Positions 1 to 56,243 are shown, counted from the stretch's first letter. The stretch is DNA of 64,000 nt from Auanema rhodensis (GCA_964057225.1 OZ059894.1:8060001-8124000), one strand, 5' to 3'. Numbers and translations: made by a program. Notes: generated by a model from the letters alone, not told the origin.

Positions 1-35
1 TTATGATGATTTTACTGTTTAAAATCAGTTGAAAG

Positions 36-7332: not shown

Positions 7333-9165
7333 ATGGAAGTTAATAATGTAGGAATCAGTGGTATTCAAATTTATTTTCCTAAAAATGTGATTCGACAAAC
7401 GGATTTTGAAAAGGTGTGTGAATTTATACATTGTTATTTTACTTTACGGTTTCTTTAGCATTGCAATGTCTCTGCTGGAAAATATACGATTGGCCTTGGC
7501 CAACAGGAAATGGGATTTTGCTCTGATAATGAGGATATAGTGTCCATTTCTTTAACAGTAACTGATAAACTTCTACGGGACTATAATGTTAATTTTTTCA
7601 CAAGTTTTTTTTACGAATTGCTTCCTTGTTTAGATTGACACCAATTCCATTGGCTTTTTAGCCGTGGGGACGGAAACTCTTATCGATAAAAGCAAAAGTG
7701 TCAAAACAGAACTTATGCGGTTGTTCCCAAATAACACGGACATTGAGGTTTATACTTTGCGTATTAATTTTATTCAAGTTTAATTCTCAGGGAGTCGATG
7801 TAAAAAATGCTTGTTACGGTGGTACTCAAGCCGTTTTTCATGCTGTAGACTGGATTTATGCCAACTATGGCACAGAAAAAAGAAATGCCATTGCTGTTTT
7901 ATCAGATATTGCTGTATACGAGGAAGGATCTGCTAGATGCACTGGAGGTACGTGAAGTCAAACATTTTAATCAAATATATTTTCTGTGCAGGAGTTGGAG
8001 CCATTGCTGTTCTCATAACACCTGATGCTCCTATTGTTTTTGAGCGAGGTTTAAGAGGAATACATATGGCTTATAACTGGGACTTTTACAAGCCTATCTG
8101 TAATCTGGTTTTATACATTATTCCTTACTTTTCTTATTGGTACAGGCAAAAAAGTTTCGGAGTATCCCTTAGTTGATGGACACAATAGTTTGAAATGTTA
8201 TATGGATGCATTAGACAAGAGTTATAATTCCTATAAAAATAAAGCGAAAGCTATTACAGGGGAAGGTATGTTAAAGTTTGTTATCTTTTTTATAATTAGT
8301 TTTTGTCAAGAGCGATCAGTGCACTCATTTGATGCCTTAATGTTTCACTCACCTTTTGTGAAAATGGTGCAAAAAGCAGTCGGTCGGCTAGCTTATTCTG
8401 ATTACCTCTCAGGTACCTATAATGTTCCTGAATATGAAGAACTCAAGTTAGTTTTGATTCACTTATTAAATTATCAAATATTTTGAAGAACACTTCCTTC
8501 AAACTCTCCTGATGATCCTAGCTTCATAAAAGTTTTATTAAAAGCCGCGAACTCTTTATGGAATGAGAAAACAGAACCAAATATAGAATTTAATAGGTGG
8601 TTTCGTAGAACAATATTATTTATTCCGATTATGACGTTTCAGAAGAATTGGAAATATGTACACCTCTTCCCTTTTTGCCCAGCTAGTCAGTTACATATCT
8701 AAAAGGTAAAAGCTTGTTGATTTATAGATATTTATTGTTTCATTTTGTTTAGAAATATATCATCTAATAGTCGAATTTTATTTTTTGCTTACGGAAGTGG
8801 CTCAGCTTCTGCTACCTTTTCCGCTATTGTAAAACCAGATCACGAAAAACTATCCAAGATGCAAGAAGTATGCCTTCGCTCCGTTAAACGGATGGATAAT
8901 CGTGAAGTTCACTCATGCTCATCCTATTATGATGCATTGAATGCTCGCGAAAAGTTTTTATTAGCAGATGGTGAGTTACTTAGTGGCTTTATAACTAATG
9001 TTATATTAATATATTTCAGTTCCATATATTCCACTATCTATTTCGGATTCCAGGTTTTCTTTCTTTGATAATACATATTACTTGTCGTCAATTGATGAAT
9101 TCTATAGAAGATCTTATTCTCAAATATCGCGCTTAGAAATGAACGGCCATTGTAGAAATACTTAA
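7333..9165 (+). CDS. hmgs-1: Hydroxymethylglutaryl-CoA synthase
   Basis: [35 protein letters not shown], catalytic [33 protein letters not shown], and C-terminal [15 protein letters not shown]. Confidence 0.97.
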
Positions 9166-9423
9166 AGAGTTTTTATTTTTGTTGATTCTGTTATTTTGTT
9201 AACTAACATTGTTTCTAGATTTTATTATTACTTCTAATATTATTATTACAATCATTGTTTTTTTCAAAGGATAGTTTATAGTAATTTTATACAAATTTTT
9301 ACTCAAGGTTGAGTATAAAATATATTTCTAATCAAATGTTCCAAGTTTATATACAAGATTCAAGTTCTTAGCATATCTATTCGCTTTTTTTATTCAAGCT
9401 GAATTCATCCGGAGTTTTTAGAA

Positions 9424-12400
9424 ATGACATCTAGGTCAAGAAGTAGATCTCTCGAAAGCAGTGCAAGGTATACACCAGCTTAATGTTGATTCACTTTTTA
9501 GCTATTTACAGTAGAAAAAGTGCTTCGTCAAAATCACCCAGTCGTTCTCCTGATAAAAGCAGAGGTCGCACTAGAAGGAAAAAGAGGGATTCTGGATCCA
9601 GAAGGTTTAGTTATGATCTAGTTATGATCTCCAATACTCATTATTTATAGCGTTTCACCTAGTAAGTCTTCGCATGAGACTTTACGAGTGGCATGGAGGG
9701 AGTTGAAGTTAGATGAAAACAATTTCGATGTTTGGATGAATGTTGTTCAGTTAGCAGACCAGCTTGTACGCATTAAAAATGTATTATGCTCTAAATGCTT
9801 TTGTTTCAGAATGAATCTGATATTACTAAAGAAGTTTACGAACGTTTTTTAGCCCGTTATCCGTTTTGTTACGGGTTCTGGAAGAAGTTAGCTGACTTCG
9901 AGAAAAGAAACAACCATATTGAATCTGCGCTTAAAGTGAGTTGGGTTTTCCTATTTTTACATAAGTTTTACGTTTTCCGGTATGGGATCAAAGTGTCACT
10001 GCTATACCATTGTCTATAGACTTATGGCTTGGTTACATCGGATTTGCTCGTGAAGTCTATGGAGCTGTGGGAGATTTTGATACAATTAATTGGTAGGGAA
10101 AATACGCCATTTACTTTTCTAATAGTATTTTTTAAAGTTTGTACAGTCGAGCCTTGACAACAGCCGGTTTGGAGTTCAAGAGTGATAGTTTATGGAATAA
10201 TGCAATTGCTTGGAAAGAATCACGAGGAGATTGGAAAACAGTTTCTGAGATATACGACAAATTGTTAACGATTCCAACTATGATGTATAAAAGTCATTAT
10301 GAAAGGTTTATCATTCGTTCTTGAATGCTTAGTCAGTGATTCTATTCAGATATGAGTCAATTATTAATGCATATGAGCCTGACGTGTTCTTATCAAACGA
10401 AGAATACGAAAAAATTATGAGTAAAACTCGTAAGCATTTGAATTTAGGGGTTAGTTAAAAGTGAAAAAGTTGAAAGCATTCCATTAGCTTAATTCAGAGT
10501 GACGAATGCTACATTAAAGAAGAAGTTCCTGAAACAAATTCTTCAGTTGAATCCCCCGTAGAGGAGACTAAACCCAGTGTTCTCACAGTTCAAAAGGTTC
10601 GAAAAATTCTCTGTTTAGAGATTTTCGAAATCTTTGCATTTTAGCATAAACCAGAAGTTCTTATGTTTTTCCGAAGTGAAATTTTGTCTCGTCGTAGGAA
10701 GCTGCACGAGAAAACAATTGAAAAATATAACGCAAGAGCAGGGTTTGAAGGACAAGTTAGTTTGAAGAGAAATAGAAAGTATTTAGTTTTCTTTTCAGAT
10801 TAAACGGCCGTATTTTCATGTCAAAGCTTTAGAAACTGCTCAATTGAAAAATTGGAAGCAGTATATTCAGTATGAAATGGATCAAGGAGATCGTGAAAGA
10901 GTTTATGTACTTTTCGAACGATGTGTAATTGCCTGTGCATTGTATGATGAAATTTGGCTCATGGTTGGTTATGATGTTGTCATGATTTCTAATGAATTTA
11001 TAGTATTCACGGTGGGCATCTGTGCATAAAGATAGGAAGGAAGCTCGTGCTATAATAAAAAGAGGACTTGTTCATTGCCCTAAAAGCATTCATTTAACTT
11101 TGGCTTTATCCGCATTATATGAGCAAGGAGGTATTTGATTTTGCTGATTTTACCTTCACCTCATTGCTTCAATTTCTTTTTTTGAATTCATAATAGCGTT
11201 TTTGTTATCTGTTCTGTTTTTCACGATCTGTTTTATAGGAAACTTCAAAGATGCTTTGTATGTATTAGATTCCTTTGATAGAAGAAATGATGGGTTTGCA
11301 GCCATTCAAATTCGAAGGTTAGGAGTTCATCGGCGAATGGAACAAGCTGAGAGGTACTATCTTTGATGTTGTACAGAACTACATGTATCTTTTTCAGTAA
11401 ACCTAATTATTCCACTGTAATCAGTAAGTGGGAAACTTTGATTCATTCACCTGATTCAACCCGAAGTCTTAGTAGTTATTATTCCATTAAACTAGCAAGG
11501 TTGAATCATTTTATTCATAAGCATTAATTTTTTTTCGTATTTTAGATTTCATTTGAAGATTCGAAGTGATAGAAAATTGGCTGAAAAGGTTATTAAAAAG
11601 GCTTTAGAACGTGACAGGGTAATAAATTTTTAATTTTTATTCAAATTAAGTATATTTTTAGGATAATATGCAATTACATCTTCAACTCATAGATTTAGCT
11701 TACACTGACCCTGAATTTTCACAGGTCTTATTAAATCGTTTCCCCGTGAAAATATGATTATACTTTTCTTTAGTCTCGTGTCATAGAAGCTTTTGATAAT
11801 GCTCTTCGTGCTAAATTTCCTCCTAATGATAGATTGAGAATAAGCCAAAGAAAGTTAGACTTCTTAGAAGACCTCTGTTATGATGTTGCTGTGTATGATT
11901 TTAAAATTTCTGAATCATTCAAGATTAATTTGTTTTAGTTTACAAGAGCATTATGAAATGCATCACTCATTACTTAAAGAAATCGAAAATCCTGATCTCC
12001 ATACCAGAAAAAGAAAATATGAAAGGACTGATCGACGGTATGTTTTCAATATTTGAAAAAGTATTTGCTATTTTCTTTATTTGTAGCGATGATGAAAGAG
12101 GGGGCCGTGGATATGACCGGTCGTCACATGGGCAACAGTCTTATGGTTACTCTGCACAACAGCAACAACAACAGCAACAACCATATTACATGCCGAACGG
12201 TAGGTACAGCTCATCAAGGCTGCACTAGACAACGCTAGATGTGATAAAGTTATTGTCTTTTGTCTTTTTTCTTCTATTTTAATTGCATGTTTGATTGCTC
12301 AAGTATAACAGCATGTCTTAGCTTTATAAAAAAAACTCACTCTTCTTTGATATTTAATTTTTTTCCGACTTTTATCTGTATTGCTATAGGCTCTATCCCT

Positions 12401-12554
12401 GTTCACCTAACTAAGCATGTATATTCTGCTTTTTTGTGTAGTTATACCTGTGTTAATGAAAATGCTTCTATTGAAAACTCTTAATATTCCAGGGTATGTG
12501 GACCAGTATAATCAGCAGATGGCTGGGGGTAATATGAACTATCAATACTATTAA
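9424..12554 (+). CDS. prp-39: Pre-mRNA processing factor 39 (U1 snRNP HAT-repeat protein) with RS-rich N-terminus and Q/Y-rich C-terminus
   Basis: [60 protein letters not shown] and [17 protein letters not shown] are characteristic PRP39 motifs. Confidence 0.92.
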
Positions 12555-12640
12555 GTTGTTCTTGTTATCGTCACTTCAAATAATGTTATCGATATATCTT
12601 TTCTGATCTGTTTATATGGGGATTTTTACAAATAAATATT

Positions 12641-13853
12641 TCATATTCCATTATCACAGTTGCCGTTTTTGAAGACCACCAGAGTGGTTTCTGATGGGAT
12701 GTGTTTGGATGGACGTTCGCAATTGCTGTATGTCTTACCAACTGAAAATAACTTTTTTCGGATTATAGCAAATCTAAGCTGAATGCAAACCTAATGATCC
12801 ACTTTTCCAAGCCATAGCGCATCCAGTTAAATACACGATAACGTAAATGCAAAGAAGCAGTAAAGCACTTCCAATAAAAATTGTACCTCTGAAAGAAAAA
12901 ATGACTCGCTTTATAAACATAAAAAGAAATTTGATAGTTACATGAGAGTCATTTGTAGATCTCTCTGACAGCATTCCATAGCACAACACGTATCATCACA
13001 TAGGAAATATGTGTGGAACCACTAAAGACATTTGAAATTTAATGCTTAAGACTATGACACTTACGGGATTTTCTAGTTTTGAGGCTTCTGCAGCACCAAT
13101 AATATGTTTCATATGTACTGCATAGGTACAAATAGTGTTGTCGATCTGAAAATTTTTTATTAATTTTGTGAAAAAAGCCCTTGAATATGCTATTCTGGCA
13201 AGTATGCTCATCAAACTTTTGCGTGACTTTTGATGGAACTTTTGCTTTAGTTTCGTGTCGTTCTGAACTCAAAGAGACTTTTGAAAAATGATTGTTATTA
13301 TCAAAGAATCGAGTCAAAAGGTCATACGTATATCACAATAAAGTTCATGTTTCTGCTTTCAGAAGCATTTAGTGAAAAAAAATCAAAGTACAAGCCCCCT
13401 GTTTTGGAAAAAATTGAAATTTTGCAGTTGCACATGAATTTGATGCTTGCTTTTTCTCAACAAATCATAAATCTATATCCACTTCCTTCTTCCAGGAACA
13501 GCATTTTCAAAATTGCTGTCTAGTGAAGCGTATATTCTGATACTCATGAGATCATAAGCCATATGGAATGATATTCGGATACTAGATTGTGAAAAAGCCG
13601 TGTACTCTTAAGTTTGATGATAACATGATTTGAAGATTTAAAGATTTAAAGATTATATTTCGAGAAAGCTGAGATAAAATTGTGAGAAAACTTACATCTT
13701 TAAATAAATAAACCAATTTGGTATCATTTTGATAATAATGGGTGATGCCTGATATGGTTGAGAAAGTTATGGAACAGTTGACACAAAAATCTTTAAAATT
13801 TTCGCTGGCTGTTTGATTAATTTCGTGCCACATCTTTGGTCGATACAGATTTC
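12641..13853 (-). CDS. Nematode CX-module single-pass membrane protein (5' structure unresolved)
   Basis: Last exons splice to ICTYAV...WFHTYFLCDDTCCAMECCQRD, a hydrophobic TM (LIGTIFIGSALLLLCIYVIVYLTGC) and a short tail ending at TGA 12641-12643. The C.Y...C...CC...CC + TM pattern fits a CX module. Confidence 0.55.
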
Positions 13854-15103
13854 CTGAAAAAAAAACACAATGTATTTGATGTAAGATGTAGCATTGAAAC
13901 CCGGATGTTAAATCACTTTAACAATGTTCTTTCTATCTTTTTTCTTATTGAGAAAGATGAATTTATTTTTGTTATTTTAATTAAAATATTTTTGAAACAA
14001 CATATGTTAGTTTTTCATAGCTTATCCTGCTATTTTCTTCATGTGCAGAACAGCAAGAAATCATAGGCAGCAGCAGCTTCCTGGTTTAACTGACATTTTT
14101 TATATTTGTTTCAGGATAAGTTGGTCGAGTTAATCTTCAACATTCACACTTTTTTATGAGAGAAGTGAATAAAAAAATATGATAATGTTGTTCACTATGT
14201 GAAAAAATGCATGAAAATATGTTATATTTGAGACATCTATGGATTTATTTGGTAATATCAAGTAGGCTAAATAGTTCAAATATTCATGAAAGTTTCATTG
14301 AGATACAGAAAAAAAGCTCTGATAACAGAAGGAATTTAAAATATTATATACTATAGGATTAGAAATTTCAAGCCCCACCAGTATTGTCGTTCAATTTCTT
14401 AAAAGCATTGCTTAAAAGTTATTTTTCTTCGATTGAAACCAAACAAGTAGAAATTGTCCGATGGACGAGTGATAAGTTTGAAGTCAGAGAGATGTTTTCT
14501 TTAAAAATTTTGTAAAATATCGAACTTGCCCTCTGTTTTGCATTCTTTTCAGATATGTCGGCTGTCTAATTTTTTTTGCTGCATTGGTCTCATTTTACTA
14601 TTTTCTGTCGAAGTGGTTTTATTTTTGTAGAAAAATATAAAACAAAAGGAAGATGAATAGAAAAAAGCAAACAAATAATAGTTTTAGATAACAGATTAAA
14701 TCTGATAAAACTATCCTTTGGGACTTGTTTTATGACGGAGGTCACTAGTTTTTAACTTAAAACAACGATGTATTTTCATTGTTTTTAAGATGACAATGTC
14801 CGTTTACTACGTGATTCTCCATGGGCACAATATCTTTAGGTTTTACTCTTCGTCTTAGGCCAAGTGTTCAACTTCATACTCAACTGTGGCTTAACTATAT
14901 TTCTCAACAAAAAAAAACAACAGAGGATGCAATGAAACAGAAAGAAAACAAGGGCATATCGAAGAATACCAAATTCATGATGGTCACCATGATGATTACA
15001 TATTCATTTGTTCAGTACGATGACAACAAACCAAATTCTACTTACTCATACCTCTCTGGTTTCTTCTATTTCTTCTCCTTATGGGCTCATTTTACTTCTT
15101 TTT

Positions 15104-15111
<8 letters not shown>

Positions 15112-15176
<65 letters not shown>
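15112..15176. repeat. (CT)n microsatellite preceded by a poly-C tract
   Basis: Directly visible run. Confidence 0.95.
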
Positions 15177-15180
<4 letters not shown>

Positions 15181-17782
15181 ATTCGGCTTTTTCAATGTCA
15201 GTTCAGCTAAAGCTTAAGTGAAATTCAAATTGTCAATGTTATATTTTGAATTGATCTGTTTATGATGAAAAAAGCTTTTCCAGTAACATCAACAACACAG
15301 CTCGAAACGCTTAAGATTTGAAAATGCTTTTGGATTACCTAATGCTCAGTGCATAGATTAGAAAAAGCTCCTGGGTAACTAAGGCATAGAGCTAGAATGT
15401 GAGAGATGAGGACTTTTAAAGATTTGATGACGTAAGTCTAGTTTCATATCCGGGATGCTGAGCTTGTCTGCAACAACGTTTGACCTCTTCTGTTCACTTT
15501 GTCACTGATTTGAATAAAGTAAATTTCATAAACCTCACCCCTCATGTTTTGTTAAGCTTCAGTTCTTTGATTCAAAAAAAAATAAGAAATTTCTTCAACT
15601 TGAATATCTAATTAGTATATTTCTTTAGAATTAAAAGAAAAAGTTATTCATGAACTCCATCTCGTTTCTTGTGTTTGTAATGGCGGCAGGATGAGCAATG
15701 CTTGTTCTATTTGAATTTAGATTGGAATAGCTACCTTATATTCTAAACAAAGAGAAAATAAACTTTTTCTGAGGTAACAATGATTCTCATACTTAGTTAG
15801 AAGTAGAAGAATTTGCTCAAAATGTCTTTCCTAGTATGCATTGTCAATTTAATGATTAGGTTAATCTAATATATGCATAAGAAAATGTCACTTCTTCAAT
15901 TTCATGAGAAGATAAAGCAAGTTTTAGATCGAAAAACTCCTAAGAAAAAGAAGATGAGCAAACTAAAAGAAAGATCTTTTAACCAAATGAAAGGAAAATG
16001 AATCAGATATATAGGCTAGATATAATTCAGGCACTCACATTTCACACGAAATTGCTTTGAAAAAATATTTAATGTTTTCCATTTGCTTTTACTTTTCCCT
16101 TTTTCAACATTGTAATTTTGATTCATAGTATTTTGAATATATTAATGCTAACCATATAGACAAAAACAAGCAAACTAAATATCTTTTGTGATAAAACAGA
16201 TTTGAAACATAAAACGAGTCAGAGACTCGAAATTACTCCAAGTTTCAAATACTACTAAGCTTCAAAGAAAGCTTTCTCAACTAAACCGAACTACTAATGT
16301 AAATAGCTTGACATGAGCTAAATCTGACTGTTAACAGTAAATTAGAAAACATACCTTTTTTAGGAATATCGAACAGCTGGTACCTAGTGGCTGAGCATAG
16401 TGCAACAAGCTCATCCAGTATTAGGAATAGATAAATGGTTAGTAGCATGGCACATGTTATTGCATAGTACAACAGATCACAATAATCGGCATAGAAAGTA
16501 GTATGGCTGAGCTAAAAGAATAAGTTTAATGCATATTTCAAAAGTAAAACACGAAAAAGAGAAGAACCGCAGCTTCGAAACAAAATTATTCTCATACTGA
16601 TAAATATATACGAGCTAGTTAGACATCGGGTAATGGGGTTTTACAGAAGCCATTCAAAAGTTCAGAGTTTTTTGAATGTTGCAAAGCGTTTTATGCATTA
16701 AAGAGCGTTCAAGCTTGAATTTCGTGACAACGGATTTTGGAAGAGCAAATGCATCTGAGTGAAGAAAATTTCGGAAAAAAACTGAGAAAAGAGAAGAAGG
16801 AATAGAAACACTGAGATGATTCTGTTGTGGGAATAACAGCTTACAGAGGAAACTAATTCAGAGATGAGCTTGCAGACAGCCGACGATGAATGGCAGAGTA
16901 TGAGATAGTATTCTTTACTTCATTTATTCTTAACATAGTGTATTAGAACGCGGTGGAAGAAAAAAGAGAGAAACATGCATAGGTTGGAATTCCTATTCGG
17001 TAATAGATGGAGAAAGTATTATTCCATTCATTTCCCAAGCCCAAGTATCTGCAAGAAACCAGGTTTGGATCATCTTGGCTTAACGTCTTGCAGTTATCCA
17101 ATGAATGTAGTAAGTAAAAATAAATGCTCATATCTTTTAAATTTCCGGATGGAACAGGCGGATAGATAGAAAATCAGAGAAAAAACGAAACCAACGAGAG
17201 AGCAAGTGAGTGTAGTTTGGAGAATGAAGGCAGGGAAGGGGTGTGTATGAGGGGAAGAGGAGGAGTAGAAGAAAAAAAATGAAAATTGGGAGTGAATGAT
17301 AGAAAAAAAATTCTTGAAAGTAATAGGAAATTAAAGGCAGCCGTTCAAAGAGAGCATATAGCGTGAAATGACACTTATAGTTCACGCTATTTTCACGTAA
17401 AAGAACATCACGCAATTTTCACGTGAACTTAATTGATGTTGAATTCAAAAATTAATGAAAGAATAAAAGAATAAAGCAAATTACGTTTATGCTAATTATT
17501 AGAATAACAAATAAATAATCATAATTCGTAAAAAGCAAATGATTTTGTGGGAATTTATATTGCAAAGATGTATTTGTGTTCATATTATTTTGAAAATGAA
17601 AGATAAAGAAAGATATGAAACGAGAATTGGACGTAGTAGCAATTAGGATGTGTCGAGGATTTGTTTTCAAGACCGATGATTCGGAAACAAAGAGAAAAAA
17701 AAGGAAAAAAAAAACGAATTGAAGCTTTGCGACCGCTGCTCACAGACTGGCTCCCTTTCCGACTTCTTGTTTCTTTTTCCCC

Positions 17783-21085: not shown

Positions 21086-21125
<40 letters not shown>
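21086..21125. repeat. (CT)n microsatellite
   Basis: Directly visible. Confidence 0.95.
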
Positions 21126-21127
<2 letters not shown>

Positions 21128-21649
21128 ATCTTTTCTTCAATTTCTCTCTTTCCATACTTTTTCTTTTTTTATATAAAAATTATATTTATACATCTATCTG
21201 TCTCTATTCATTTAGACATTCAAAAAAACAATGCCAAGCAATATTTGGCAAATTTGTTTCGTTTTTTTGTGAGTCCCGTGAACCTTATTGCTTTTCAATG
21301 ACAAAAAAAATTATTTATGGCAGAAAAACAATCCGTAAAGCCAAATGTAAGTAAAGTTGAGAATGAATGATGGACATGGTATGACAAAGAGTGTGAAGGA
21401 ATTTATGGATGAACATACAAAATTGTTAAATTTCTTGTTGTTAGAATGAATGTGTGAGAGATTAGAAGAAGATGATGAAGGTAGTAGAATAAAGATTGAG
21501 AATTACAGAGAGATTTACGAGGAAACTACTGCATTTATCCGACATCTACACTAGAAGGACTTATACACGAACAAAGATGCAAGAAATAGAAGTCAGAAGT
21601 TATGCTGATGAGGAAAAAAGCTATTATATTCAGAGAAAGAAACAAATGT

Positions 21650-21917: not shown

Positions 21918-21968
<51 letters not shown>
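21918..21968. repeat. (GA)n microsatellite
   Basis: Directly visible. Confidence 0.95.
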
Positions 21969-21972
<4 letters not shown>

Positions 21973-24900
21973 CAGAGAAACAGATAGAACATTTAGAAGG
22001 TAAATTAACTATTGTTCATATAATAATAAACAATGAAAAAGTCTATATAGCTTTATTCTCATAACAAACAAAATGAAAAATGACTTTCAACTATTAAAAC
22101 TACATTTTCATTACTTTAAAAACTCCATACTAAGTGTATGTATGTATTTTTAAAATTAAATTTATTTTATACAAGAAAATAGAGAAAAACTATAATTGTC
22201 TGGTCAGAAATATCATTAGTTTTTCAAGAAACAATAACAAAAACAGGAAAATAGTTAAAAATAAATTTTTAAAATTTGGAAAAATTTAAAAAGAAAACTG
22301 AGAAAGTTGAAAAAAAAATTATTGAAAGATACAATAAATGTGTTGTGCGAAAAGCGTAACTCATCTTATGAAAATAAAAAAAAATTCTGTTGTTGTTACA
22401 TTCGCATATGAAATGTTGATTTATGTTGTTTAAGCTTTCGACTTTCATTAAAAAATAATAAATCTTTAGTTTTGAAACATAGGTATTGAGGTTTGAAACA
22501 TGGTCTCAACCCATGTATCTCCAACAAGCTTAACTGGAAGACGCCCGAATTTAACAAGAAACGTACCGACTTACATGATCTAGAAATACAAAGAACATGC
22601 CGAGAAATTTACTTGAAAGCAGCTTACATTCCTTAGAAGAAGGAAAAGAAAACAAACCTATGAAGTCAACGTTTCTTTTTATTTTTTTTGTTCAAAAAAA
22701 TAAAAGAAAAAGGTATTTCAATTTCATATTTTAGGGAATAGAATGGTAGTTTTCACATGTTTAATATGAGCATTTCATTTTGGGATAAAAAAATTGTTTT
22801 TCCACTGTTGGTTATGGCTTTCAAACAGTTTTTAGAAGTAAAAGTACAAATAGATTATAATATGCAATTGGGAGTATGAGGCAAATATCAAAAATAGTAT
22901 TTAAACAAGAAACATGTAACATCAATTAATTTTTAATTTTTTTTATAATTTAATTATAAAAAATTAAAGAAATAAATAAATTTTCTTATATACATAGTTG
23001 ATTATGAATATAATATTGATGAGCATTTGCACCATAAATCTTTTTTTTTTTCTAAAAATAGCGACAAAAAAATAATTTTTTTGAAAAGAAACTTCAATAA
23101 TTTTAGTCTAAAAATATTTTTTTGATATTTTTTTAGTTTCCAAATGTAAAACAACGTGACTGAAATCTCAGATTTGAAAATGTTTTTAAGTTATTTCAAT
23201 GAAAAATTAATGAAAAAATATAATTTTTTACATATCAAACTCATTTTTAATATTTTCAGATTTTTCATCTCATAAGGGGATTTGGAAAAAATATTCTAGC
23301 ATTTCCATGTAAAAAAATTAAATTTTGCTGAACAAATAATCAATTCATCATTATGATCTCGATGATTATTTGAGCTGAAATGGAAACTCTGAAAGCTTAC
23401 TCTGCTCACTAGCCAAATTTGATTTCGAAAGCACTTCATCAGATAATTTTTTTTGTTGTAAAAACTTTTTCAATTTTATGATTGATCACTTTATTCTTTA
23501 TCTTGTTTTCTATTTGAAAATAGAAGCAATTGGTTATCAATTCATAAAAACCTCATCTTTCTCACCATCTCCCTTCTCCTCTTCCTCTTCTGATCACTGT
23601 TCTTCTATCACCTCCTTCTCTCTCTCTCTCTCTCTCTCTCATTTGCTGTTTCACTTTTGTCTTTTAATTTGATGAATCTATCATAGTTAAAACTGTTGTT
23701 TCTTCAAAATTTAATGGAAATTATCAATTGTTTCTGGAAAACAATGCATTCTATGGAAAAATCTAAATATATAATGTGATTTGACAAAGAAATATATCAA
23801 CTTTGAATGACGTCAACGATTAATCTTCATGAAAAACTTCTTCAATCATATATTTTTACGTAAAAAAGTGAGAATATTTTCAATTATTTGTTAATAAAAA
23901 ATTATTTTGTGATGACTAACAATTCAATTACAAGTTACAGAGGGATTTATCTAGATTATATAATATTCTGGCAAATAGTCTGAATAACTATCTCTTATAT
24001 ATTATGTTATAGTTAGTTAAATATATTAATTTTTTATATGATTTAAAACAAAAAAAGGTTAAATTATATATTTATATATTATACTATATGAATGATATAG
24101 CTAAATATAGTATAGTATCTATGATATATAGAAGATAAGTACAAAAATCCAGTTTTATATGAGATTTATTATATAGATGTTCACATATAGAAAGAGAATT
24201 TTCTTTTAATATATAATATATCTTCAATCAAATATATATTTTAATAATAATTCAGACTTCAACAGTCTAACATCTGTTTAGTTTATACCAAAAACGAAAA
24301 AAAAAAAAGGATTTTTTTGAATATCTGGTGAAGTTAACTATACGCGCCAATAACATATTTAAATTATTACATTTATGTATATTTAATATATTTTGATAAG
24401 AAAACAAATTTTATAAAGTTTATTGTTGTTGTTGTTGTTGTTTATATGTATGTATATTCATAAATATTTGTTATTTATAAATATATGTATATTCAAGACT
24501 ATTTTTCAACCTTTTTTATAACCTTATATGTTTATTGTTAATATAATTTACTTTTAGTTATCTGTTTTGATCATTTGAAAGAATGTTCAAATCAGTTTTT
24601 AAAAAATGTTTAAACAACGTCATTGCAAATGCTTGAATGGCTACTATTCCAATTTTGAATTCGAAAAAAATTGTTTAGTTAGCTGAGCAAGTTTGAACTT
24701 GACATCCTTGAGCGAATATTATAATTATTCCTTCTTCTTTTTCAATATTTAATGTTAATTATTGGTTTAAATTTCTCATTTTAACTCTCGAATTCTTAAT
24801 ATTTCTTCTTAAATCTTCAATTTCTTATGAATCATGACTAATATCCCAACTATATCTCACTGTTGCTATTGATGTTCATGATGATGATGGTGATATTATC

Positions 24901-41684: not shown

Positions 41685-42538
41685 TTAGCAGAAGCATCGT
41701 CCAGTGTTGCATGGAAGTCCGAGGCAGTCATCAGCAGCAGTCTTCTTCTCGCACTTCTGGATGTTACAGAGCTTTCCAAGAGCCTCGAATGAATCAGTAA
41801 ATCCATTCATGACGTGGGCCTTTATATATAAGATAACATAAATACTTGGAAACCTTCAACTTACGGTGAAACAGTCGCACATTCCAGTGGTGCTGTTGCA
41901 GGCGTTTTGAAGTCCTCCACAGTCAGCATGGCTCTCGCACCTATACAGTCAAAAGTTTAACTTAGATCATACTATTAGGTAAACTGACTTCCAGAAGTTA
42001 ACGCAGGCATTGCAGTTGCAAGTTCCGAGGAAAGCTCCAAGGCACTGTCCTCCGTGGCAGTCATCATTATCGTGGCAGACAGAGAGGGTTTCACACTTCT
42101 TCTCCTCAGCCATGCCAGATCCCTAAACGAAATGTTACTTGAGGAATAAAGACTGATGATTCACCTCGATTTGTTCAATTTGGCTCTCGACTTCTTCAAC
42201 TTGTTCCTTGAGCTCGTCGACGTCTTTCTTGATTTCTACAACTTCTTCTTCAATAGAAAGAGCCTCCTTCTCAATTTCTTCGGCGGCTTCTTCAAGTCTT
42301 TCAGCGTTCTCCTCAGCTACAGTTTCCTCAGTCTCTTCGGTGTCCCTCTTCATACGGTAGACGGATTCAGCGTAGAATCCAGAGGCTTCAATGCCAGATC
42401 CTTCCTCATTGATTCCAGATCCTTCTTCAATAGCTGGGAAAGCTGCGACAACTAAAAAGCCAGAGATAAACATCCATTAACGAGCATAGTGAACATACCA
42501 GCAAATCCAAAGGCAAGGAGAGCCAATAACTTCATCAT
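41685..42538 (-). CDS. cpg-3: Chondroitin proteoglycan 3-like secreted protein
   Basis: Signal peptide; repeated EEGSG/EASG attachment sites; acidic coiled region; Cys-rich domain CHDNDDCHGGQCLGAFLGTCNCNAC...DCGGLQNAC...CLGLPCNTGRCFC. Confidence 0.85.
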
Positions 42539-48139: not shown

Positions 48140-49401
48140 ATGATGACCGATTTAAAAGTAGATACTATATCTACAGGTTTTATGTGTATATTATATGTTG
48201 TTTTAGGTTAATTTTTAATTTTTATTCATTTTTTTTAATAATTTTACTTTAGGATTAATAGTATGTGCATTTAAAATTTTAAATATTTTATTGTATAGCT
48301 CAAAAAAAAGTCTTTTACATAAATATACATATATGGTTGCTCTTGAAGTTGGAGATTTTGTAAATGGTAAAACAAATTTTTATTTTTTTTATACTAAAAT
48401 TATTATAATTTTAAATATTTTATTAAAATAATTATAATTAAAGGTATAAGTTATATATATGTTGGATTTGGACGAGGAATAGCTTTAATCAATGGATATT
48501 TAAATGAGCCAACCACATTGTATAATTGTTTTTTCGGAGTAACATCTTTTTAAAGTTTTCAAATTTAATTTTAATATTTTCCAGCATTATTGGGTTTATT
48601 TACTAATTTTGGGTACAGAATTACCAGCATTCTGTATAGTTCTTATTTCAATAGAAAGAGTCTGTGCTGTTGTTCGCCCAGTTACATTTATGAAAATCTT
48701 TGATGGAAGATATAAATATGTTCTTCTAGCCATAGTTCCAACACTTGGAATTGTATGTTTTTGAAAAAAAAAACATTTGGTTATACATATATAATGGAAA
48801 ATTATTTATTTATTTTTAGATATCATTGATTGTAGCTGCATTCAGTGCAGTAGCAGAAGGTGATCGAAGAGTTACAACAAGACATTGTCCCATAATTTCA
48901 AGTACTTCAATATGGTTTGTTATAGATTAAAGTATATCAAATAATTTATCAGAAAAATTTTATTTGAATGAAAGAATATTCATGCTTGAAATTTTAGTAT
49001 TTAACTCAAATTAATCAACCATATACAATTGTATTGTTAGAAAGTATAAGTTGATGTTTAATTTCACAACAAAAAAAATGAATACTATGAAGATTAAGAA
49101 GGAAGTTCAATATAAATTAATATGATCATTAACTATATATTCATATAATAAACTTATAATTATTTATACATATATGCGATTTACGTGGCTATCTATGTAG
49201 TAAGATATCATATGAGTGTTGAATTATTATATTAACGAATATATATTTCCGCTTTTCATATGATTACAATTGAATTTCAAAAAGATACTCATGTTCAAAA
49301 TAGAAAATAATGTCCAACGTGGGCTACCACTTTCTGGAGATATAACTTTCCCCTCCTCTCCCTTTCTCTCTCACGTGTACGCGGACACACGTACATACTC
49401 T

Positions 49402-49470
<69 letters not shown>

Positions 49471-50282
49471 GATCTTCAATTGAATTTTGACTAATCATTT
49501 CCAAATATGAAGTAAGTAAAACTTTACGTGATTTTTCGAACCAATAAAGTCATTTGTGTCAGCTGTTGTGACTAATTTTCCATAAAAATACCAATAAAAT
49601 TAAATTCATATAATAAGGAAGAAATATAATATTTGAAAGAAAAATAATTCTAATTTCACGTAATTTGTATAAATTTTCAGGTTTGCGACATATCACTTCG
49701 TTACTATAACAGCTGTATATATTATAACTTTTACAGCTTTAGGTATAGTTAAATATCGTGTACAGGTGAGTTAAAATACAATTTGTTTTCTGTATATTTG
49801 TATACGGTATTTCCTATTTTCTTCAGAAAATGTTAAGTGGAGGTAGTTCATATGATAGTCGTGTGAATATGATGATGGTTATAACAGGTAAACTTGCATG
49901 AAAACATATAAAAAAAATTAAAAAATTTTCTCAGGAGCTTCACTTATTCTAGTAGGAAGTTCAGCGTTTGTTATGCTTGTTATACGATATGATCTTATGA
50001 ATATATCTGATACAATTGTTGGAATCACTTATTCTATGCCCGGGTATTAAAATTTTCAATGTAATTATAAATATAAATACTTGTATTTCAGGTTTTTATC
50101 TATCGTTAATTCACTTGCAAATATATTTTTCCTGGCAGAGCTTAAAGTGCAGCTATATCGTAAACTAGGAATACGGTATCGTTTACTATATTTCCTTTTT
50201 ACATTAATTAATTTTCAATTGTAGACAAGATCAAAAAAGTATAATTGGATCAACATTTGCACACCATACAACACATTCTTAA
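48140..50282 (+). CDS. Serpentine 7TM chemoreceptor (Srsx-like), copy 2 (tandem paralogue)
   Basis: Colinear with copy 1: HYWVYLLILGTELPAFCIVLISIERVCAVVRP, HCPIISST, TYSMPGFLSI. Confidence 0.85.
49404..49470. repeat. (CT)n microsatellite in a GPCR intron
   Basis: Directly visible. Confidence 0.95.
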
Positions 50283-50404: not shown

Positions 50405-53400
50405 TTATAATGTTTGAACTTTTTGGATTGAAGTATAGTGGGATGAAACATTATCTAAGCCTAAGTATGAAATGGACATATTTTTTAGTTCAAACTTCTT
50501 TACTTTTCCTGTTGCTGTTAATGGAAAATCTTTCCTTTCCTTAATAAATATGTATTTGGGAACTTTGTAATAAGCCATCTGAAAGTATTTGATCATTTGA
50601 TTTCTCAAAAAAAAAACAAAAAAGACCGTTTTCTTGCAATCATTGATAATATCCTCATGAGATATTTTGTCAACATATTCATCTTTCAAGATAATCCATG
50701 CACAAATATTCTCACCATATCGTTCATCAGGAACACCAATTACCTTAAATTCAAAAAGTATATGATATTTCAACATATAGTATAAGTAATATACAAAAGG
50801 TTGACGCTGGCGTGCAGATTTTCAACATTTTAAAAACATTTTTTCATTGAAAATCATACTTAATTTCCCCAAAATGTGTCATTTTTGAAAAATAACCAAA
50901 ATGTGTCTTAAGATTAAGAACTTCCGGGGAATCTTTATGAGAAACAATGTGCCGAGTGAAGGAATTAAAGAAAAAGAAGTAGGTATTATCAATCTAGACT
51001 CTTCTAATAATAAAGGAACTCATTGGGTTTGCTACTCCAAGAATAAAGAAAATATTTATTATTTTGATTCCTTTGGATTGAATCCACCAGAAGAAATCAT
51101 AAAATATCTTAAAGATAGAAAAGATAGAAGAATAGAACTTTCAACATTTCAAATTCAAAAATTCGGAACCCATCATTGTGGTTAAAAAATTGAAAGTGGG
51201 CAAAATGGGTGCGCCAGCGTCAACCTTTTGTATACTACTAGTATATGTATATTCATACATGAACATCAGACACATATGGAAACTTGAAAATAGCTGCTTC
51301 AATTTCGGTTGGATAAACATTTTCACCGCCTGAAGTAATAGAATACGATTTTGATTTGAACGTATGTATATGAAAACCTTTAAGTATCATATCCTTACTT
51401 CTTCCAACTATATTCACAGAGCCATTCTCATTCATTATACCTGTATCGCTGCAAACAAGAAAAATAAAAAATAACAACTTCTTTCACTCCAAATGTACCC
51501 AGTCTTATACCAATTCTGAGGTGTTATATCTTGTTTTGTTTTTTCTTCATCTCCCCAATAACCACTCATTGTCATATATCTTAAAGCATTTTAAAATAAT
51601 ATTCGGTACTGTAGCTTTCATCGTCATACCCTCGTGCCCACAGCTCGCCAGGTACACCACGTGGAACAGGACATCCGTCTTTATCAACAATAACAGCCTC
51701 AAATAAAATATTTAACGAATAAACTTAAAAGTAGAATAACTTCAGCTGAAGACATTACATAACCGGCACTTTTGATTCTCTCAACTGGTTCTTCTGATTG
51801 TTTTGACATTAAAATACATGGAGATAACTCAGTTGAACCATATACAACATAAATATCTTTAACATTCAAATATTCAACCAGTTGTTCAGCAAGAGATAAA
51901 GGACATGGTGCTCCCCCAATATAGCCTGCAAAACAGTTTTAAAACAAAATTAATCATAAAGTATGCTCGTACAGATTACGTGAATAATTTGAATATTTGC
52001 GTGTAAATATCATTTTTGCAAAAAGTGCGCACGAAATCGGTTGATTGCATCTTGTGGATAAATTACAAAAAAAATAGATAAAAATAGATATTCAATATTT
52101 ACGTAAATATAATATTTCGAAATTTTATTTTAATTAATTAATTAATTACCTCCTCTTAAGCTTTGTATATTAGCATGTTTCAAATGGGGTGATGATAATA
52201 TATCAATAAGCATAGTTGGAGTACCAAATAGGAATGTGCATCTAGAGTATAGTAAATTCAAAATTTAAAAGAATATCCCAAGAAACTTTTCATTTTCAAT
52301 AGCTTTTAAAATGGCCTTTGCATCATAAGCTACCGATGGAAATACACAAGTTTGTCCATGATTTAAAGCATTCAATACACCCAATACACAGCCAAAACAA
52401 TGATAAAGTGGATTTGGTATACAGATACGATGATTCTAAAAAATAATTTATATAGTTAATTCATTCAAAATTAAGATATTTACCTGGTTATTCCATCCCG
52501 AAGTCATACCCACAATATTTGAGTTATTAATAATATTAAAATGAGTAAGAGTTACAGCTTTAGGATGACCTGTTGTACCCTTAAATAGTTATAATTATTT
52601 GATATTCTATATCAAATACAAACACTTGTATATTGAATATTAATTGGATCATCAGGAACTATCCGATTTTCAATTTCGTTTAGAAGTTTCATTTCGTGTG
52701 TACCGCCAGCTTTGAAAATTTCATTAAAACTCCATGCACCTCTGAATTCAAGCGATTATATAATATGATTAAGATTATTTAATACGGAATTTTCTCATCT
52801 TCACCAAAGATAATCAAATGCTTCAACTCTGGTAGTTTGTGATCATTAACAAGCCCAACACCTGGCTTATTATTGTGCCCAATACTTCCCGCAACCTGTG
52901 ATCAAAGAAGTTAATGTTCAAGAAATGAATATATTAGTTTTATATCCTCACTTCGGTCAACGTTGCCAGAAATGAGTTTTGCTTATATGATTTAGGAGTT
53001 ACTAATGCTTTAACTCCAACTTTTTTTAAAGCATATTCAAGTTCTGGAGCTTTGTAAAATGGATTTATGTTAACCTGAAAAATTTTAAATATAATAAGAA
53101 AATGTTTTGCAGCGAAATAATGATCAACAAGATTGAATATTTTTCAAAAAATATCATCAGCACAATTTTAAATTTGAAACTTGGGTCACCTGTTTTTGCT
53201 CACGTCATAACTCAAAAAATTGAAAAAAGAAAGAAAAAAAGTTTGCATCAAGTTGAAAAAAACATACCTGAATCATTCCACATAATGCTGTAGCGTACTG
53301 AACAAGGACCCATTCATAATAGTTCTGACCCCACATTCCAACACGATCTCCCTTTTCCAGCCCTAGAGCTAATAACCCAGTGGCCATTTTATGAACATCT

Positions 53401-54060: not shown

Positions 54061-56243
54061 TTAATAAGATTTCAGTTGAGCCCATATTTGGTTTTTCCGG
54101 TTAATGTAATATGACCAGTAAACAATCTGAAATATGACATTCTTGACATATTTTTAAATTAAAAATTTACATTAAAGATGAAGAATGATAGAGGAAACAT
54201 CACACTGGAAATAGCATCAATTCTCTCTGGTGGCCAATTTGACTTTGATGATGACTATAATAAATATTTTCGTAAACCTTAAAGAACATTTTCAACATAC
54301 CGGAGTAGCGGGACCTCCACAACCCGGAGGGAACATGAATCGCCGTTCATAAAATCCTAAACCTTGCGGAGATCCAGAAGCATCGATCTGCACAGTCTGT
54401 AAAATTAAGCATAGGTGAGCATGTTCATAAAGCAAATAAACAAACTTTTTGCTTTTTGATTGAATTTTTTTTTGATGAGGGGGGCTCATCGCGCACTTTA
54501 AATCCAATTATGGCCAATTCTAACAGACTACAAAAAATGAAAGTCATAGAGACCAGCATCCAGACATCTTAAATTTGACGGCTTTTAAGGAATTTAGTTT
54601 TAAATCCTTGTTTACCTATTGCTTTGATGTAGGAAACACGTGGTAAATTCCTCATAATGTTTCCAAATTGAAAAATCATAGCTAGTAATGCGTTTACGCA
54701 CAGCATTGTACGTGCAGGAATTGCTTTAGGACCCAAAGAAAATGAAATCCAACTGAAAAAAAAAAAAAAAATATATTTTGTGAAGCATTATCCAACCTTA
54801 TGAATATTGTCAGATAAGTTGGAAGATAGGCTTGCATGAAATACCAAATAAAGCGTCGTTGAAACATCAAAGTTACATGTAATTCATCCCACATTCCAGC
54901 CGGATATGGCTGAAAATATACATATTTTTAATTGCTTAAAGATTGGTTATTTTATATGATTTGTCTTAAAATTGTTCCCCTTGAAAAATCTTTGCTACGG
55001 TTTTTCTTAAACTTTTAAAATGCTCACTTTAGAATATTTGTTTTTAGTATTACTACAGCAATTATTTTTTAATATTATTTTGTAAACAACATATCGAGAA
55101 ATAACATCAAATTCACCTCTCTTACAGCTTTCGCTTTTATTTTGAACAGATCAAAATCGGGTAAAACGATTTCGTTAACTTTATAGACGGGCTCACTGAT
55201 ATCAGCCCACTTCATCATTACTTCTTGACGATTATAATTGAAACTATAAGCAAATCAGTTCAATAAAAATGAATATCTTCCAAACCTTTCATAGATTAAT
55301 CCACAAGTTTGAAGATCTAATGGAAAGTTACTTAATTCTAATGAACAAGGTCCTTTTACACGAACCCTATAGTTGACCATTACCGTACCATTAGGGAATA
55401 GCATGAGAAAGACACTTCTGAAATCTTTTGCGGTGAACAAATTCTACATCTTAGCTAACCTAAATGGTGAATCGTGAATTTGAGCAACTTTGCTATTAAT
55501 GAAACAACTATTTGGAGTCCAAAGCCTTTCCAAAACTTGATGATTCAATGATAAATTTCCTAAAATTTGGAAACAATCATGCATTACAAGGTCAAATAAA
55601 TTACCTTTACATGGAGATAATTTTTCAAAATTAAGAGCTGGATCAAGCCATTTTTCAGTAATATAAATATCCATTTCAAAATCATTAGTTAATTCATCAA
55701 TTGAAGTTATAGCTTGTATCCAAATTTCAACAAAAACTGTCATTCCTTCATCTTCTGAAAACAACTTTTCAATTACTCCTGAACAGCATTTTTATCAAAA
55801 ACCTGGAATTCGGAACTTGTTATATCCAGTTCCATTAAGTAATTTATCTATTATATCAGTATCTCGTGTACAGTTATGATATCTTGAAATAAAGTTTTAT
55901 ATTTAAAAGTTTTAAAGTTAAGAAATTTTATTATAAAAGGTGTATAAGTGAGTGAACAGTTTTAAATATATTCATAATATCGTCTTGTTTTGGATTTTGA
56001 AAAGAAAAAAAAGACGGTGATATCTGCCATCAGCTGTCACATTTTTGACAGATTGAAAGAAAAAGTGAATGTGTTAGAAGCATGGGTATAGTATAATCAG
56101 GTAAGAAAAACATTTATTTTCAATTTGAAGACAAACCTTCTCTTGGGGATGTAGACATCATCATCATCATCAGGCTTCCAATCATAACCAACACTGGTTA
56201 CAAATGAGCATCGTAAAAATAGAAAAAAGAAGAGAATTTTCAT
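54061..56243 (-). CDS. Cys-loop ligand-gated chloride channel subunit (ACC / lgc-46-49 group)
   Basis: Signal peptide, [12 protein letters not shown], Cys loop [38 protein letters not shown], anion-selective PAR motif, [11 protein letters not shown]. Confidence 0.93.

What the first reader, a model, noticed from the sequence alone, without database searches (positions are those of the whole stretch)
50779..51245. Miniature Maverick/Polinton element (455 bp) with intact ends, carrying only a viral protease, inserted in a host intron
Seen: 28-bp TIRs (27/28 identical), termini AGTAAT / ACTACT (= AGTAGT on the other strand), a perfect 6-bp TSD AGTATA, and an internal adenain-like ORF. Established: Mavericks/Polintons have AG(T)-repeat termini, make 6-bp TSDs with a retroviral-like integrase, are normally ~15-20 kb with much longer TIRs, and are implicated in horizontal gene transfer in nematodes. 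Inference: this is either a MITE-like non-autonomous Maverick mobilised in trans, or a full element that collapsed by internal deletion after insertion. The near-perfect ends suggest a recent event and a recently active partner in this genome.
Basis: partly seen in the sequence, partly recalled or inferred. Interest (0 to 1): 0.92.

Follow-up and report, generated by a model that had tools for sequence, protein, structure and literature searches.

The report
Miniature Maverick remnant in worm intron
A 455-base leftover of a virus-like "Maverick" jumping gene, reduced to its two ends and a dead piece of its protease gene, sits in a tiny intron of a nematode metabolic gene. It is real and correctly identified, but whether it moved there as a miniature could not be tested.

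Summary
Window 50785-51239 (455 bp) has 28-nt terminal inverted repeats (27/28) and a perfect 6-bp target-site duplication (AGTATA). Its ends, AGTAAT...ACTACT, match the published Maverick end motif 5'-(AGT)2//(ACT)2-3' at 11 of 12 positions.

The interior holds a 275-nt piece of an adenain-type protease gene. The gene is cut at both ends, so the first helix and the last two helices of the fold are missing and the protein cannot work. The ORF's ATG lies in non-coding DNA.

The closest relative, metagenome contig L003, has the same tip followed by the same protease gene (98% identical over 221 nt). A complete 15.3-kb relative (L014) carries integrase, capsid, nematode-type fusogen, ATPase and an HNH-bearing polymerase. 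Its protease is the gene next to a TIR of at least 133 nt.

The host is a nematode. The element lies antisense in an intron of an acyl-CoA synthetase gene and enlarges it from 54 to 515 nt.

The window holds no second copy and no autonomous partner, and the source genome could not be reached. Insertion as a miniature (about 0.55) and collapse in place (about 0.35) therefore stay unresolved. Interest is moderate.

The parts
50779..50784 (.). Target-site duplication, left copy (AGTATA)
   Evidence: identical to 51240-51245.
50785..51239 (+). The whole miniature element, 455 bp; orientation given by the protease fragment
   Evidence: Bounded by the TIRs and the TSD. It is the only Maverick-related DNA in the window.
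50785..50812 (+). Left terminal inverted repeat, 28 nt, tip AGTAAT
   Evidence: The tip region matches the terminus at L003:442 onward.
50813..50909 (+). Left subterminal non-coding stretch. It holds a 19-nt near-palindrome (50878-50896) flanked by a 12-nt direct repeat (50869-50880 and 50896-50907)
   Evidence: nt 94-124 of the element is 87% identical to L003:560-590. The palindrome is also present at L003:560-578.
50910..51184 (+). Fragment of the Maverick adenain-type cysteine protease gene (a broken gene). It is truncated at both ends, with 0 internal stops and 0 frameshifts in what is left
   Evidence: blastn to L003, L006, L004/L005. Alignments A2/A3 keep His, Asp, Gln and Cys. It corresponds to residues about 25-116 of the 147-residue relative P0160, so helices 15-25, 115-125 and 131-143 of the model are missing or cut.
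50901..51185 (+). Open reading frame of 94 codons plus stop. Its first two codons come from non-coding subterminal DNA
   Evidence: Pfam Peptidase_C5 reaches only 15 bits against a cut-off of 21.3.
51185..51211 (-). Right subterminal stretch, 27 nt
   Evidence: 25/26 identical to L003:603-628, reverse strand. Together with the TIR it is 84% identical to L003:442-496.
51212..51239 (-). Right terminal inverted repeat, 28 nt. The tip reads AGTAGT on the minus strand, so the element ends ...ACTACT
51240..51245 (.). Target-site duplication, right copy (AGTATA)
50744..51258 (-). Host intron (GT...AG, phase 0), now 515 nt. Without the element and one TSD copy it would be 54 nt
   Evidence: Read. The joined exons read ...SDVH|VIGVPDE..., matching acyl-CoA synthetases.
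51259..51448 (-). Host exon upstream of the intron (AMP-binding enzyme / acyl-CoA synthetase); the upper bound is approximate
   Evidence: ORF map. Residues 46-73 match FadD13 residues 415-442.
50627..50743 (-). Host exon downstream of the intron (start of the AMP-binding C-terminal domain); the lower bound is approximate
   Evidence: Pfam AMP-binding_C, E=4e-7. Matches FadD-1 residues 459-506.

Best explanation
This is a non-autonomous, internally deleted derivative of a nematode Maverick/Polinton.

The parent lineage has the adenain-type protease as the gene next to one terminal repeat, followed by an HNH-bearing protein-primed polymerase. It also carries a nematode-type fusogen, capsid, ATPase and a chromodomain integrase. 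What survives here is the left end (28-nt TIR plus about 100 nt of subterminal DNA), 275 nt from the middle of the protease gene, and the last 54 nt of the right end. Two deletions account for this: one removed the start of the protease gene, the other removed everything from the protease's active-site cysteine to near the right tip.

Shown:
- the identity of the ends, the TSD, the protease fragment and the host intron;
- the fragment cannot encode an active protease.

Inferred:
- a Maverick integrase made the staggered 6-bp cut and joined the (AGT)2-type tips;
- the element was most likely already short when it was integrated, either as a defective short genome made during replication or as a deleted copy served in trans by a full-length element. 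It would then behave like a MITE;
- it is now an inert passenger that lengthens a 54-nt intron to 515 nt, antisense to the host gene.

The Maverick origin I hold at about 0.95. The confidence given below is for the whole statement, including 'inserted as a miniature'.
For: - TIR, TSD and uniqueness in the window.
- End motif 5'-(AGT)2//(ACT)2-3' and perfect 6-bp TSDs are the published signature of Mavericks (PMC8097293). Here 11 of 12 motif positions fit, and L003 has (AGT)2 exactly.
- L003 carries the same tip and then, about 190 nt further in, the same protease gene. The protein is 91% identical, and the DNA is 98.2% identical over 221 nt.
- Protease next to the end and convergent with the polymerase gene: L004/L014 and L007.
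- L014 is a complete 15,348-bp element with rve+chromo integrase, DJR capsid, Pox_A32 ATPase and a polymerase with an Endonuclease_7 insert. This matches the pPolB2 class of terrestrial nematodes. Its 725-residue glycoprotein is 51-58% identical to Caenorhabditis, Heterorhabditis and Panagrellus proteins.
- Adenain family: profile hits to ASFV pS273R (4.4e-7) and adenovirus proteinase (6.4e-6). The P0160 model (pLDDT 88.7) best matches adenovirus proteinase 1nln (E=5e-8). A named hit is 'adenain [Trichoplax MELD virus]'.
- For 'already short at insertion':
  - the tips and TSD are nearly perfect (1 difference in 34 positions) while the arms just inside differ at 9 of 22 positions (Fisher p=0.003). 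In the complete relative the two arms are 98.9% identical over the same region. That pattern fits ends kept by use, not uniform decay in place;
  - a 15-kb multi-gene insertion in a 54-nt intron of a conserved enzyme gene is less likely to persist than a 455-bp one (inference).
Against: - There is only one copy in the 64-kb window and no autonomous partner there.
- The tip pattern was not found in IMG/VR, JGI metagenome contigs or the GTDB genomes.
- The source genome could not be reached, so copy number is unknown.
- Decayed remnants that keep the protease end occur elsewhere. L003 has no polymerase downstream, and L006 keeps only a 42-residue polymerase remnant. Deletion in place is therefore a common fate.
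- The unequal arms can also be explained without mobility. The subterminal region holds two similar repeat modules, and the inner right arm matches L003's second module best (25/26). A further deletion between repeats could therefore produce the difference.
- The host's need to keep its exons, 13 and 35 nt away, would by itself confine any surviving deletion to the inside of the element.
Confidence: 0.55

Rival explanations
1. Collapse in place. A full-length Maverick of about 15 kb integrated into this intron, making the 6-bp duplication. Two (or three) internal deletions at this locus then shrank it to 455 bp. Host selection spared only deletions that stayed inside the element. The 455-bp form itself never moved.
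For: - Degraded copies are the rule for Mavericks: 96% of vertebrate loci (PMC8097293).
- The protease-end remnants L003 and L006 have lost the neighbouring polymerase gene.
- Only one copy was seen, and none in the public sets searched.
- The exons lie 13 and 35 nt from the insertion, so only internal deletions would be viable.
Against: - It needs at least two independent large deletions in a copy young enough to have a perfect TSD and 27/28 tips.
- The right breakpoint would have to fall within the last 54 nt of about 15 kb.
- The arms differ sharply inside the 28-nt tips, although the arms of the complete relative are 98.9% alike there.
- A 15-kb insertion in a 54-nt intron had first to be tolerated.
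Confidence: 0.35
2. The element is not a Maverick derivative. It would be a MITE of another DNA-transposon superfamily, or a chance inverted repeat, that happens to contain a captured protease fragment.
For: - The 28-nt TIR is far shorter than published Maverick TIRs: 46-1447 nt and 100-1500 nt.
- The ORF alone misses Pfam's Peptidase_C5 cut-off.
Against: - The tip, subterminal stretch and protease are collinear with L003, so the protease is not captured cargo but the parent's own end gene.
- The end motif and the 6-bp TSD are the Maverick signature.
- The inverted repeat is not a chance match.
Confidence: 0.03
3. The element is an assembly artefact or chimera: a mis-joined read placing Maverick end sequence inside the host gene.
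For: None was found. The raw reads cannot be inspected here.
Against: A mis-join does not create a perfect 6-bp duplication of the target around two matched inverted tips inside an otherwise continuous GT-AG intron.
Confidence: 0.02

Closest known systems
Nematode Polintons/Mavericks of the pPolB2 (HNH-insert) class with a fusogen gene (bioRxiv 10.1101/2023.08.22.554363; 10.1101/2022.07.12.499685)
   Same: - The protease is 72% identical to that of the complete element L014, which carries the HNH/Endonuclease_7-bearing polymerase and the nematode fusogen.
- The protease lies next to the terminal repeat.
- 6-bp TSD.
- The host is a nematode.
   Different: - 455 bp instead of 13-25 kb.
- No polymerase, integrase, capsid, ATPase or fusogen.
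- The protease is reduced to its middle 63%.
- The near-perfect TIR is 28 nt, against at least 133 nt in L014.
Vertebrate Mavericks with end motif 5'-(AGT)2//(ACT)2-3' and 6-bp TSD (PMC8097293)
   Same: The end motif fits (the right end exactly, the left end at 5 of 6 positions), and the 6-bp duplication is perfect.
   Different: The host phylum, the size and the coding content all differ. The intact vertebrate elements described are 12.7-24.6 kb with TIRs of 46-1447 nt.
Internally deleted non-autonomous DNA transposons and MITEs (for example Ds-del derived from Ac, PMC3260210)
   Same: Both ends are kept, a piece of the parent's own gene lies between them, there is no coding capacity, and the size is a few hundred bases with a TSD.
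   Different: The parent is a self-synthesising, virus-like element rather than a cut-and-paste transposon. No copy number or autonomous partner has been shown.
'Maverick' MITE bins in automated MITE surveys (Helicoverpa, PMC9033116)
   Same: They are short elements (50-800 bp) with TIRs of 10-42 nt and a 6-bp TSD.
   Different: In that paper's table the 6-bp TSD is the only feature given for the Maverick class, and the passages I read report no homology to a Maverick. The element here is tied to Mavericks by terminal sequence, end motif and a piece of a Maverick gene.
Adenain (adenovirus proteinase, PDB 1avp/1nln) and ASFV pS273R, clan CE cysteine proteases
   Same: The family profile and the model of the full-length relative match them best. 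His, Asp, Gln and Cys are conserved in order.
   Different: The window copy lacks the N-terminal helix, the helix that starts at the catalytic Cys and the last helix. It is a gene fragment, not an enzyme.

Membership tests
Maverick/Polinton (as a derivative) | 6-bp target-site duplication | tested here: met
   AGTATA on both sides, 6/6. Criterion.
Maverick/Polinton (as a derivative) | Conserved end motif 5'-(AGT)2//(ACT)2-3' or (AG)3//(CT)3 | tested here: met
   AGTAAT//ACTACT fits 11 of 12 positions. The relative L003 has AGTAGT. Criterion.
Maverick/Polinton (as a derivative) | Terminal inverted repeats of about 50-1500 nt | tested here: inconclusive
   A TIR is present but near-perfect for only 28 nt (27/28), then 13/22. 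This is shorter than any published range.
Maverick/Polinton (as a derivative) | Ends homologous to those of an element with the Maverick gene set | tested here: met
   The tip and subterminal DNA match L003. L003's end region and protease are collinear with the start of L004, which is the end of the complete L014. L003 itself is only an end fragment.
Maverick/Polinton (autonomous element) | [quoted passage not shown] | tested here: not met
   Absent from the element and from the whole window.
Maverick/Polinton (autonomous element) | Retrovirus-like integrase gene | tested here: not met
   Absent. It is present in the relatives L002, L008 and L014.
Maverick/Polinton (autonomous element) | Capsid proteins and packaging ATPase | tested here: not met
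   Absent. They are present in the relatives.
MITE / trans-mobilised non-autonomous family | Short, non-coding, with TIRs and a TSD | tested here: met
   455 bp, with only a dead gene fragment.
MITE / trans-mobilised non-autonomous family | Several copies of like length at different sites with different TSDs | not testable with these tools
   One copy in the window and none in the public sets searched.
MITE / trans-mobilised non-autonomous family | Autonomous partner with the same tips in the same genome | not testable with these tools
   None in the window. The rest of the genome was not available.
Adenain / Peptidase C5 (clan CE) | Catalytic His, Asp/Glu, Gln and Cys in order | tested here: met
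   H41, D56 and Q86 are invariant and C93 nearly so in A2. The same columns are conserved in A3.
Adenain / Peptidase C5 (clan CE) | Match to the family model above its curated threshold | tested here: not met
   The window ORF scores 15 bits against a cut-off of 21.3. Of the 18 aligned sequences, 9 match Peptidase_C5 at E<=0.01, and the family profile hits adenain at 6.4e-6.
Adenain / Peptidase C5 (clan CE) | Complete catalytic fold | tested here: not met
   The model of the full-length relative has the adenain fold (1nln, E=5e-8). The window fragment covers only residues about 25-116 of 147 and loses 3 of 9 secondary-structure elements.

The most novel reading that the evidence does not exclude
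The 455-bp unit is one member of a family of miniature Mavericks that full-length elements in this nematode move in trans. It would be the first MITE-type family tied to Mavericks by sequence rather than by TSD length. It would show that about 28-54 nt of each end is enough for the Maverick machinery to recognise and integrate a DNA, and that this machinery was active recently in the germ line.
Probability: 0.3. Interest if true: 0.65.

Novelty: new variant of a known kind. Interest (0 to 1): 0.45.

Why it matters
Mavericks are known as 13-25-kb virus-like elements and are implicated in gene transfer between nematodes.

- A 455-bp copy with both tips and a perfect duplication marks out, in a natural example, how little of each end accompanies an integration event.
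- It points to integrase activity recent enough that tips and duplication have barely changed.
- It exposes a blind spot. Published nematode surveys required five Maverick proteins within 20 kb, so short derivatives like this would not be counted.

If it proves to be one of many copies, it offers simple presence/absence markers for Maverick activity in populations. If it is a lone collapsed copy, it is an ordinary, though unusually tidy, relic.

Tried and rejected
- **Reaching the source genome.** Exact-product look-ups of four window ORFs were all negative: the 94-codon ORF, its shorter start, the 123-residue host ORF next to the element, and a 112-residue ORF at 42135-42473. Copy number and empty-site alleles therefore could not be examined.
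- **Searching for the tip elsewhere.** The tip pattern had no match in IMG/VR, JGI metagenome contigs or GTDB genomes.
- **Related loci in JGI metagenomes.** Only 37-47% relatives turned up. IMG/VR gave 67 loci, the best 60% identical. None of the fetched contigs ends in an (AGT)2 or (AG)3 motif.
- **L007.** This is the second-closest protease (76%). Its 198 nt upstream show no recognisable tip.
- **Naming the L004 polymerase.** The 1276-residue ORF had no sequence hit in the PDB. It was identified only through its size, position, Endonuclease_7 insert and homology to the large ORFs of L001, L002, L007 and L008.
- **RNA genes.** Rfam and tRNA scans of the window found nothing. A tRNA-looking stretch upstream of the L006 protease was not confirmed.
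- **Rejected idea: a protease inside a long TIR.** Butterfly polintons carry adenain inside 2-kb TIRs. I considered a parent with a protease at both ends and dropped it, because L014's TIR stops just before the protease gene.
- **Kapitonov and Jurka 2006.** The paper is not held.

Full report
**1. Observation**

- A 28-nt inverted repeat (50785-50812 and 51212-51239, 27/28) bounds 455 bp.
- It is flanked by a perfect direct repeat AGTATA (50779-50784 and 51240-51245).
- With up to three mismatches the 28-mer occurs only at these two places in 64 kb, against 0 expected from shuffles. The same holds for its 15-nt core.
- A scan of the whole window for non-simple perfect inverted repeats within 5 kb puts this pair first (23-nt core). 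The runner-up is an 18-nt A-rich pair.
- The arms continue imperfectly to 50 nt (80%). Identity is 27/28, then 13/22, then 2/10.
- Neither the repeat nor the duplication can be extended outward consistently, so a 6-bp duplication and an AG tip are the best reading.

**2. The interior**

The only long ORF (50901-51185, + strand, 94 codons) is weakly adenain-like on its own. Pfam Peptidase_C5 gives E=0.02, below the cut-off. The best PDB match is the ASFV pS273R protease, E=0.03.

It nevertheless has many relatives:
- 2,856 cluster representatives at E<=0.001;
- among 90% clusters, one at 91% identity (P0157) and several at 71-76%;
- named hits from the nematodes Auanema and Heterorhabditis, and 'adenain [Trichoplax MELD virus]'.

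A profile of 18 aligned members hits ASFV pS273R (4.4e-7), adenovirus proteinase (6.4e-6) and then SUMO proteases. Nine of the 18 match Peptidase_C5. A model of the closest full-length relative from a complete element (P0160, 147 residues, pLDDT 88.7) matches adenovirus proteinase 1nln best (E=5e-8, TM 0.66).

The alignments show that the window ORF covers only the middle of the protein, about residues 25-116 of 147.
- His, Asp, Gln and Cys are kept.
- The first helix, the helix that begins at the catalytic Cys and the last helix are gone.
- The ORF's ATG lies in the non-coding subterminal DNA, not at the protease's own start.

Count of breaks:
- protease gene: two truncating deletions, one at each end, with no stops or frameshifts in the 275 nt retained;
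- every other Maverick gene: absent altogether.

**3. Link to Mavericks**

Relatives of the protease lie in loci with a DJR capsid, Pox_A32-type ATPase, rve integrase, a PLA2-domain protein and an ORF of 1,100-1,280 residues (L001, L002, L008).

The closest relative is the 1,468-bp metagenome contig L003. It carries the same terminal sequence, beginning AGTAGTATAC at L003:442. About 190 nt further in lies the protease gene.

blastn places the element's parts on L003 in order:

| Part of the element | Identity to L003 |
|---|---|
| Tip | 84-88% |
| Subterminal stretch | 87% over 31 nt |
| Protease fragment | 92.7% overall, 98.2% over 221 nt |
| Right-end 54 nt, on the opposite strand | 84% |

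In L004/L014 and L007 the protease is likewise the end gene, convergent with the polymerase gene.

L014 is the whole 15,348-bp contig. It has:
- an integrase with rve and chromo domains;
- a DJR capsid;
- a 725-residue glycoprotein whose homologues (51-58%) are Caenorhabditis, Heterorhabditis and Panagrellus proteins, which I take to be the fusogen described for nematode Mavericks;
- an ATPase;
- a polymerase-sized ORF with an Endonuclease_7/HNH insert. This fits the pPolB2 class reported for terrestrial nematode Polintons.

Its two arms are 98.9% identical over 91 nt. The repeat reaches at least 133 nt and ends just before the protease gene.

The published signature of Mavericks is the end motif 5'-(AGT)2//(ACT)2-3' with a perfect 6-bp duplication (PMC8097293). 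The element shows AGTAAT//ACTACT.

**4. Host and insertion site**

The flanking exons on the minus strand belong to an AMP-binding enzyme, an acyl-CoA synthetase (Pfam; PDB matches to FadD13 and FadD-1).
- The exon ending ...SDVH at 51259 is followed by GT. The exon starting VIGVPDE at 50743 is preceded by AG, phase 0.
- The intron is 50744-51258, 515 nt. Without the element and one copy of the duplication it would be 54 nt.
- The element lies antisense to the host gene, 13 and 35 nt from the exons.

The host is a nematode. Every named relative of a ligand-gated channel exon in the window comes from a nematode (Diploscapter 70%, Ancylostoma, Meloidogyne and others). This agrees with the relatives of the protease and the fusogen. 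The species was not identified.

**5. How it got there**

That a Maverick integrase made the insertion is inferred from the 6-bp duplication and the end motif. Whether the DNA was already short could not be settled.

For 'already short':
- the tips and the duplication are nearly perfect, while the arms just inside differ at 9 of 22 positions (Fisher p=0.003). The complete relative's arms are 98.9% alike over that region;
- a 455-bp insertion in a 54-nt intron is more likely to be tolerated than a 15-kb one.

Against:
- only one copy was seen;
- L003 and L006 show that remnants keeping the protease end arise by decay;
- the subterminal region holds two similar repeat modules, so a further deletion could also make the arms unequal;
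- the host's exons, so close by, would confine surviving deletions to the element.

I put insertion as a miniature at about 0.55, collapse in place at about 0.35, and anything else at less than 0.1.

**6. Comparison and novelty**

- Full-length nematode Mavericks are well described.
- 96% of vertebrate Maverick loci are degraded.
- A study of the lizard Anolis noted an apparent absence of non-autonomous copies.
- Automated surveys list 'Maverick' MITEs whose only stated feature is a 6-bp duplication.
- In the papers I could search I found no miniature copy tied to a Maverick by end sequence, end motif and a piece of a Maverick gene. From memory, Repbase lists non-autonomous Polintons, but I could not check this.

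I therefore rate it a new variant of a known kind, of moderate interest.

**7. Limits and slips**

The tip was absent from the collections I could scan.

Slips, declared as required:
- Later I wrote the terminal letters of adenovirus and phage genomes.
- I also worked out there where the deletion junctions lie.
- None of the remembered letters went into a tool call, a note or this report.
- The report gives only the bounds of the parts and counts of breaks.
The consensus lines that the alignment tools printed were not used.

Noticed in passing
window 50910-51184 compared with L003:735-1006: Identity to L003 is mosaic: 39/52 in the first 55 nt of the protease fragment, then 216/220 in the rest. 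The first part is about equally distant (about 70-75%) from L003, L006 and L007. This suggests recombination between Maverick lineages, or local change next to the deletion.
   Followed up: partly
window 50869-50907; L003:560-578: A 19-nt near-palindrome (window 50878-50896) is conserved in the subterminal DNA of both the window element and L003. In the window it is flanked by a 12-nt direct repeat, CCAAAATGTGTC. It may be a protein-binding or promoter element next to the protease gene.
   Followed up: partly
L003:462-473 and 588-600; L014 right end: The terminal repeat of the relatives holds two copies of a module of the type CTGGCG...GCCCA, about 110-125 nt apart. The window's right arm keeps one such module, and its left arm keeps a degenerate one.
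   Followed up: partly
L014 (ENA ERZ922514, bioreactor metagenome), 1-15348: This 15.3-kb contig has a full, uninterrupted Maverick gene set of nematode type and both terminal repeats, lacking only the extreme tips. Several other relatives also lie on contigs of about 15 kb. This suggests whole elements are being assembled from environmental samples.
   Followed up: partly
L008:10410-12449 (Logan ERR13731157): Two Peptidase_M10 (matrixin-type metalloprotease) genes lie directly after the adenain gene in a 15.2-kb Maverick-like contig. They may be cargo.
   Followed up: no
L001:13641-15699 (7.3-Mb eukaryotic contig, ENA ERZ26273219): Three RING-finger (zf-C3HC4_3) genes in a row lie between the protease and the capsid gene of a Maverick-like locus.
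   Followed up: no
P0004, P0009; L001:9336-9851, L002:3221-4468, L008:2062-2616: A parvovirus-type phospholipase A2 domain (PF08398) recurs in these elements. It is sometimes predicted as one protein with the adenain domain.
   Followed up: no
L003:40-130 and 370-430: The DNA into which the L003 Maverick end is inserted looks by eye like an inverted-repeat (foldback or MITE-like) element. This was not tested.
   Followed up: no
window 21087-21133, 21918-21968, 23617-23640, about 49330-49480: Long (CT)n/(GA)n microsatellites occur at several places in the window.
   Followed up: no
window 55444-55764 (-): An exon of a Cys-loop ligand-gated ion channel (PF02931 in all hits). It was used only to place the host among nematodes.
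   Followed up: partly
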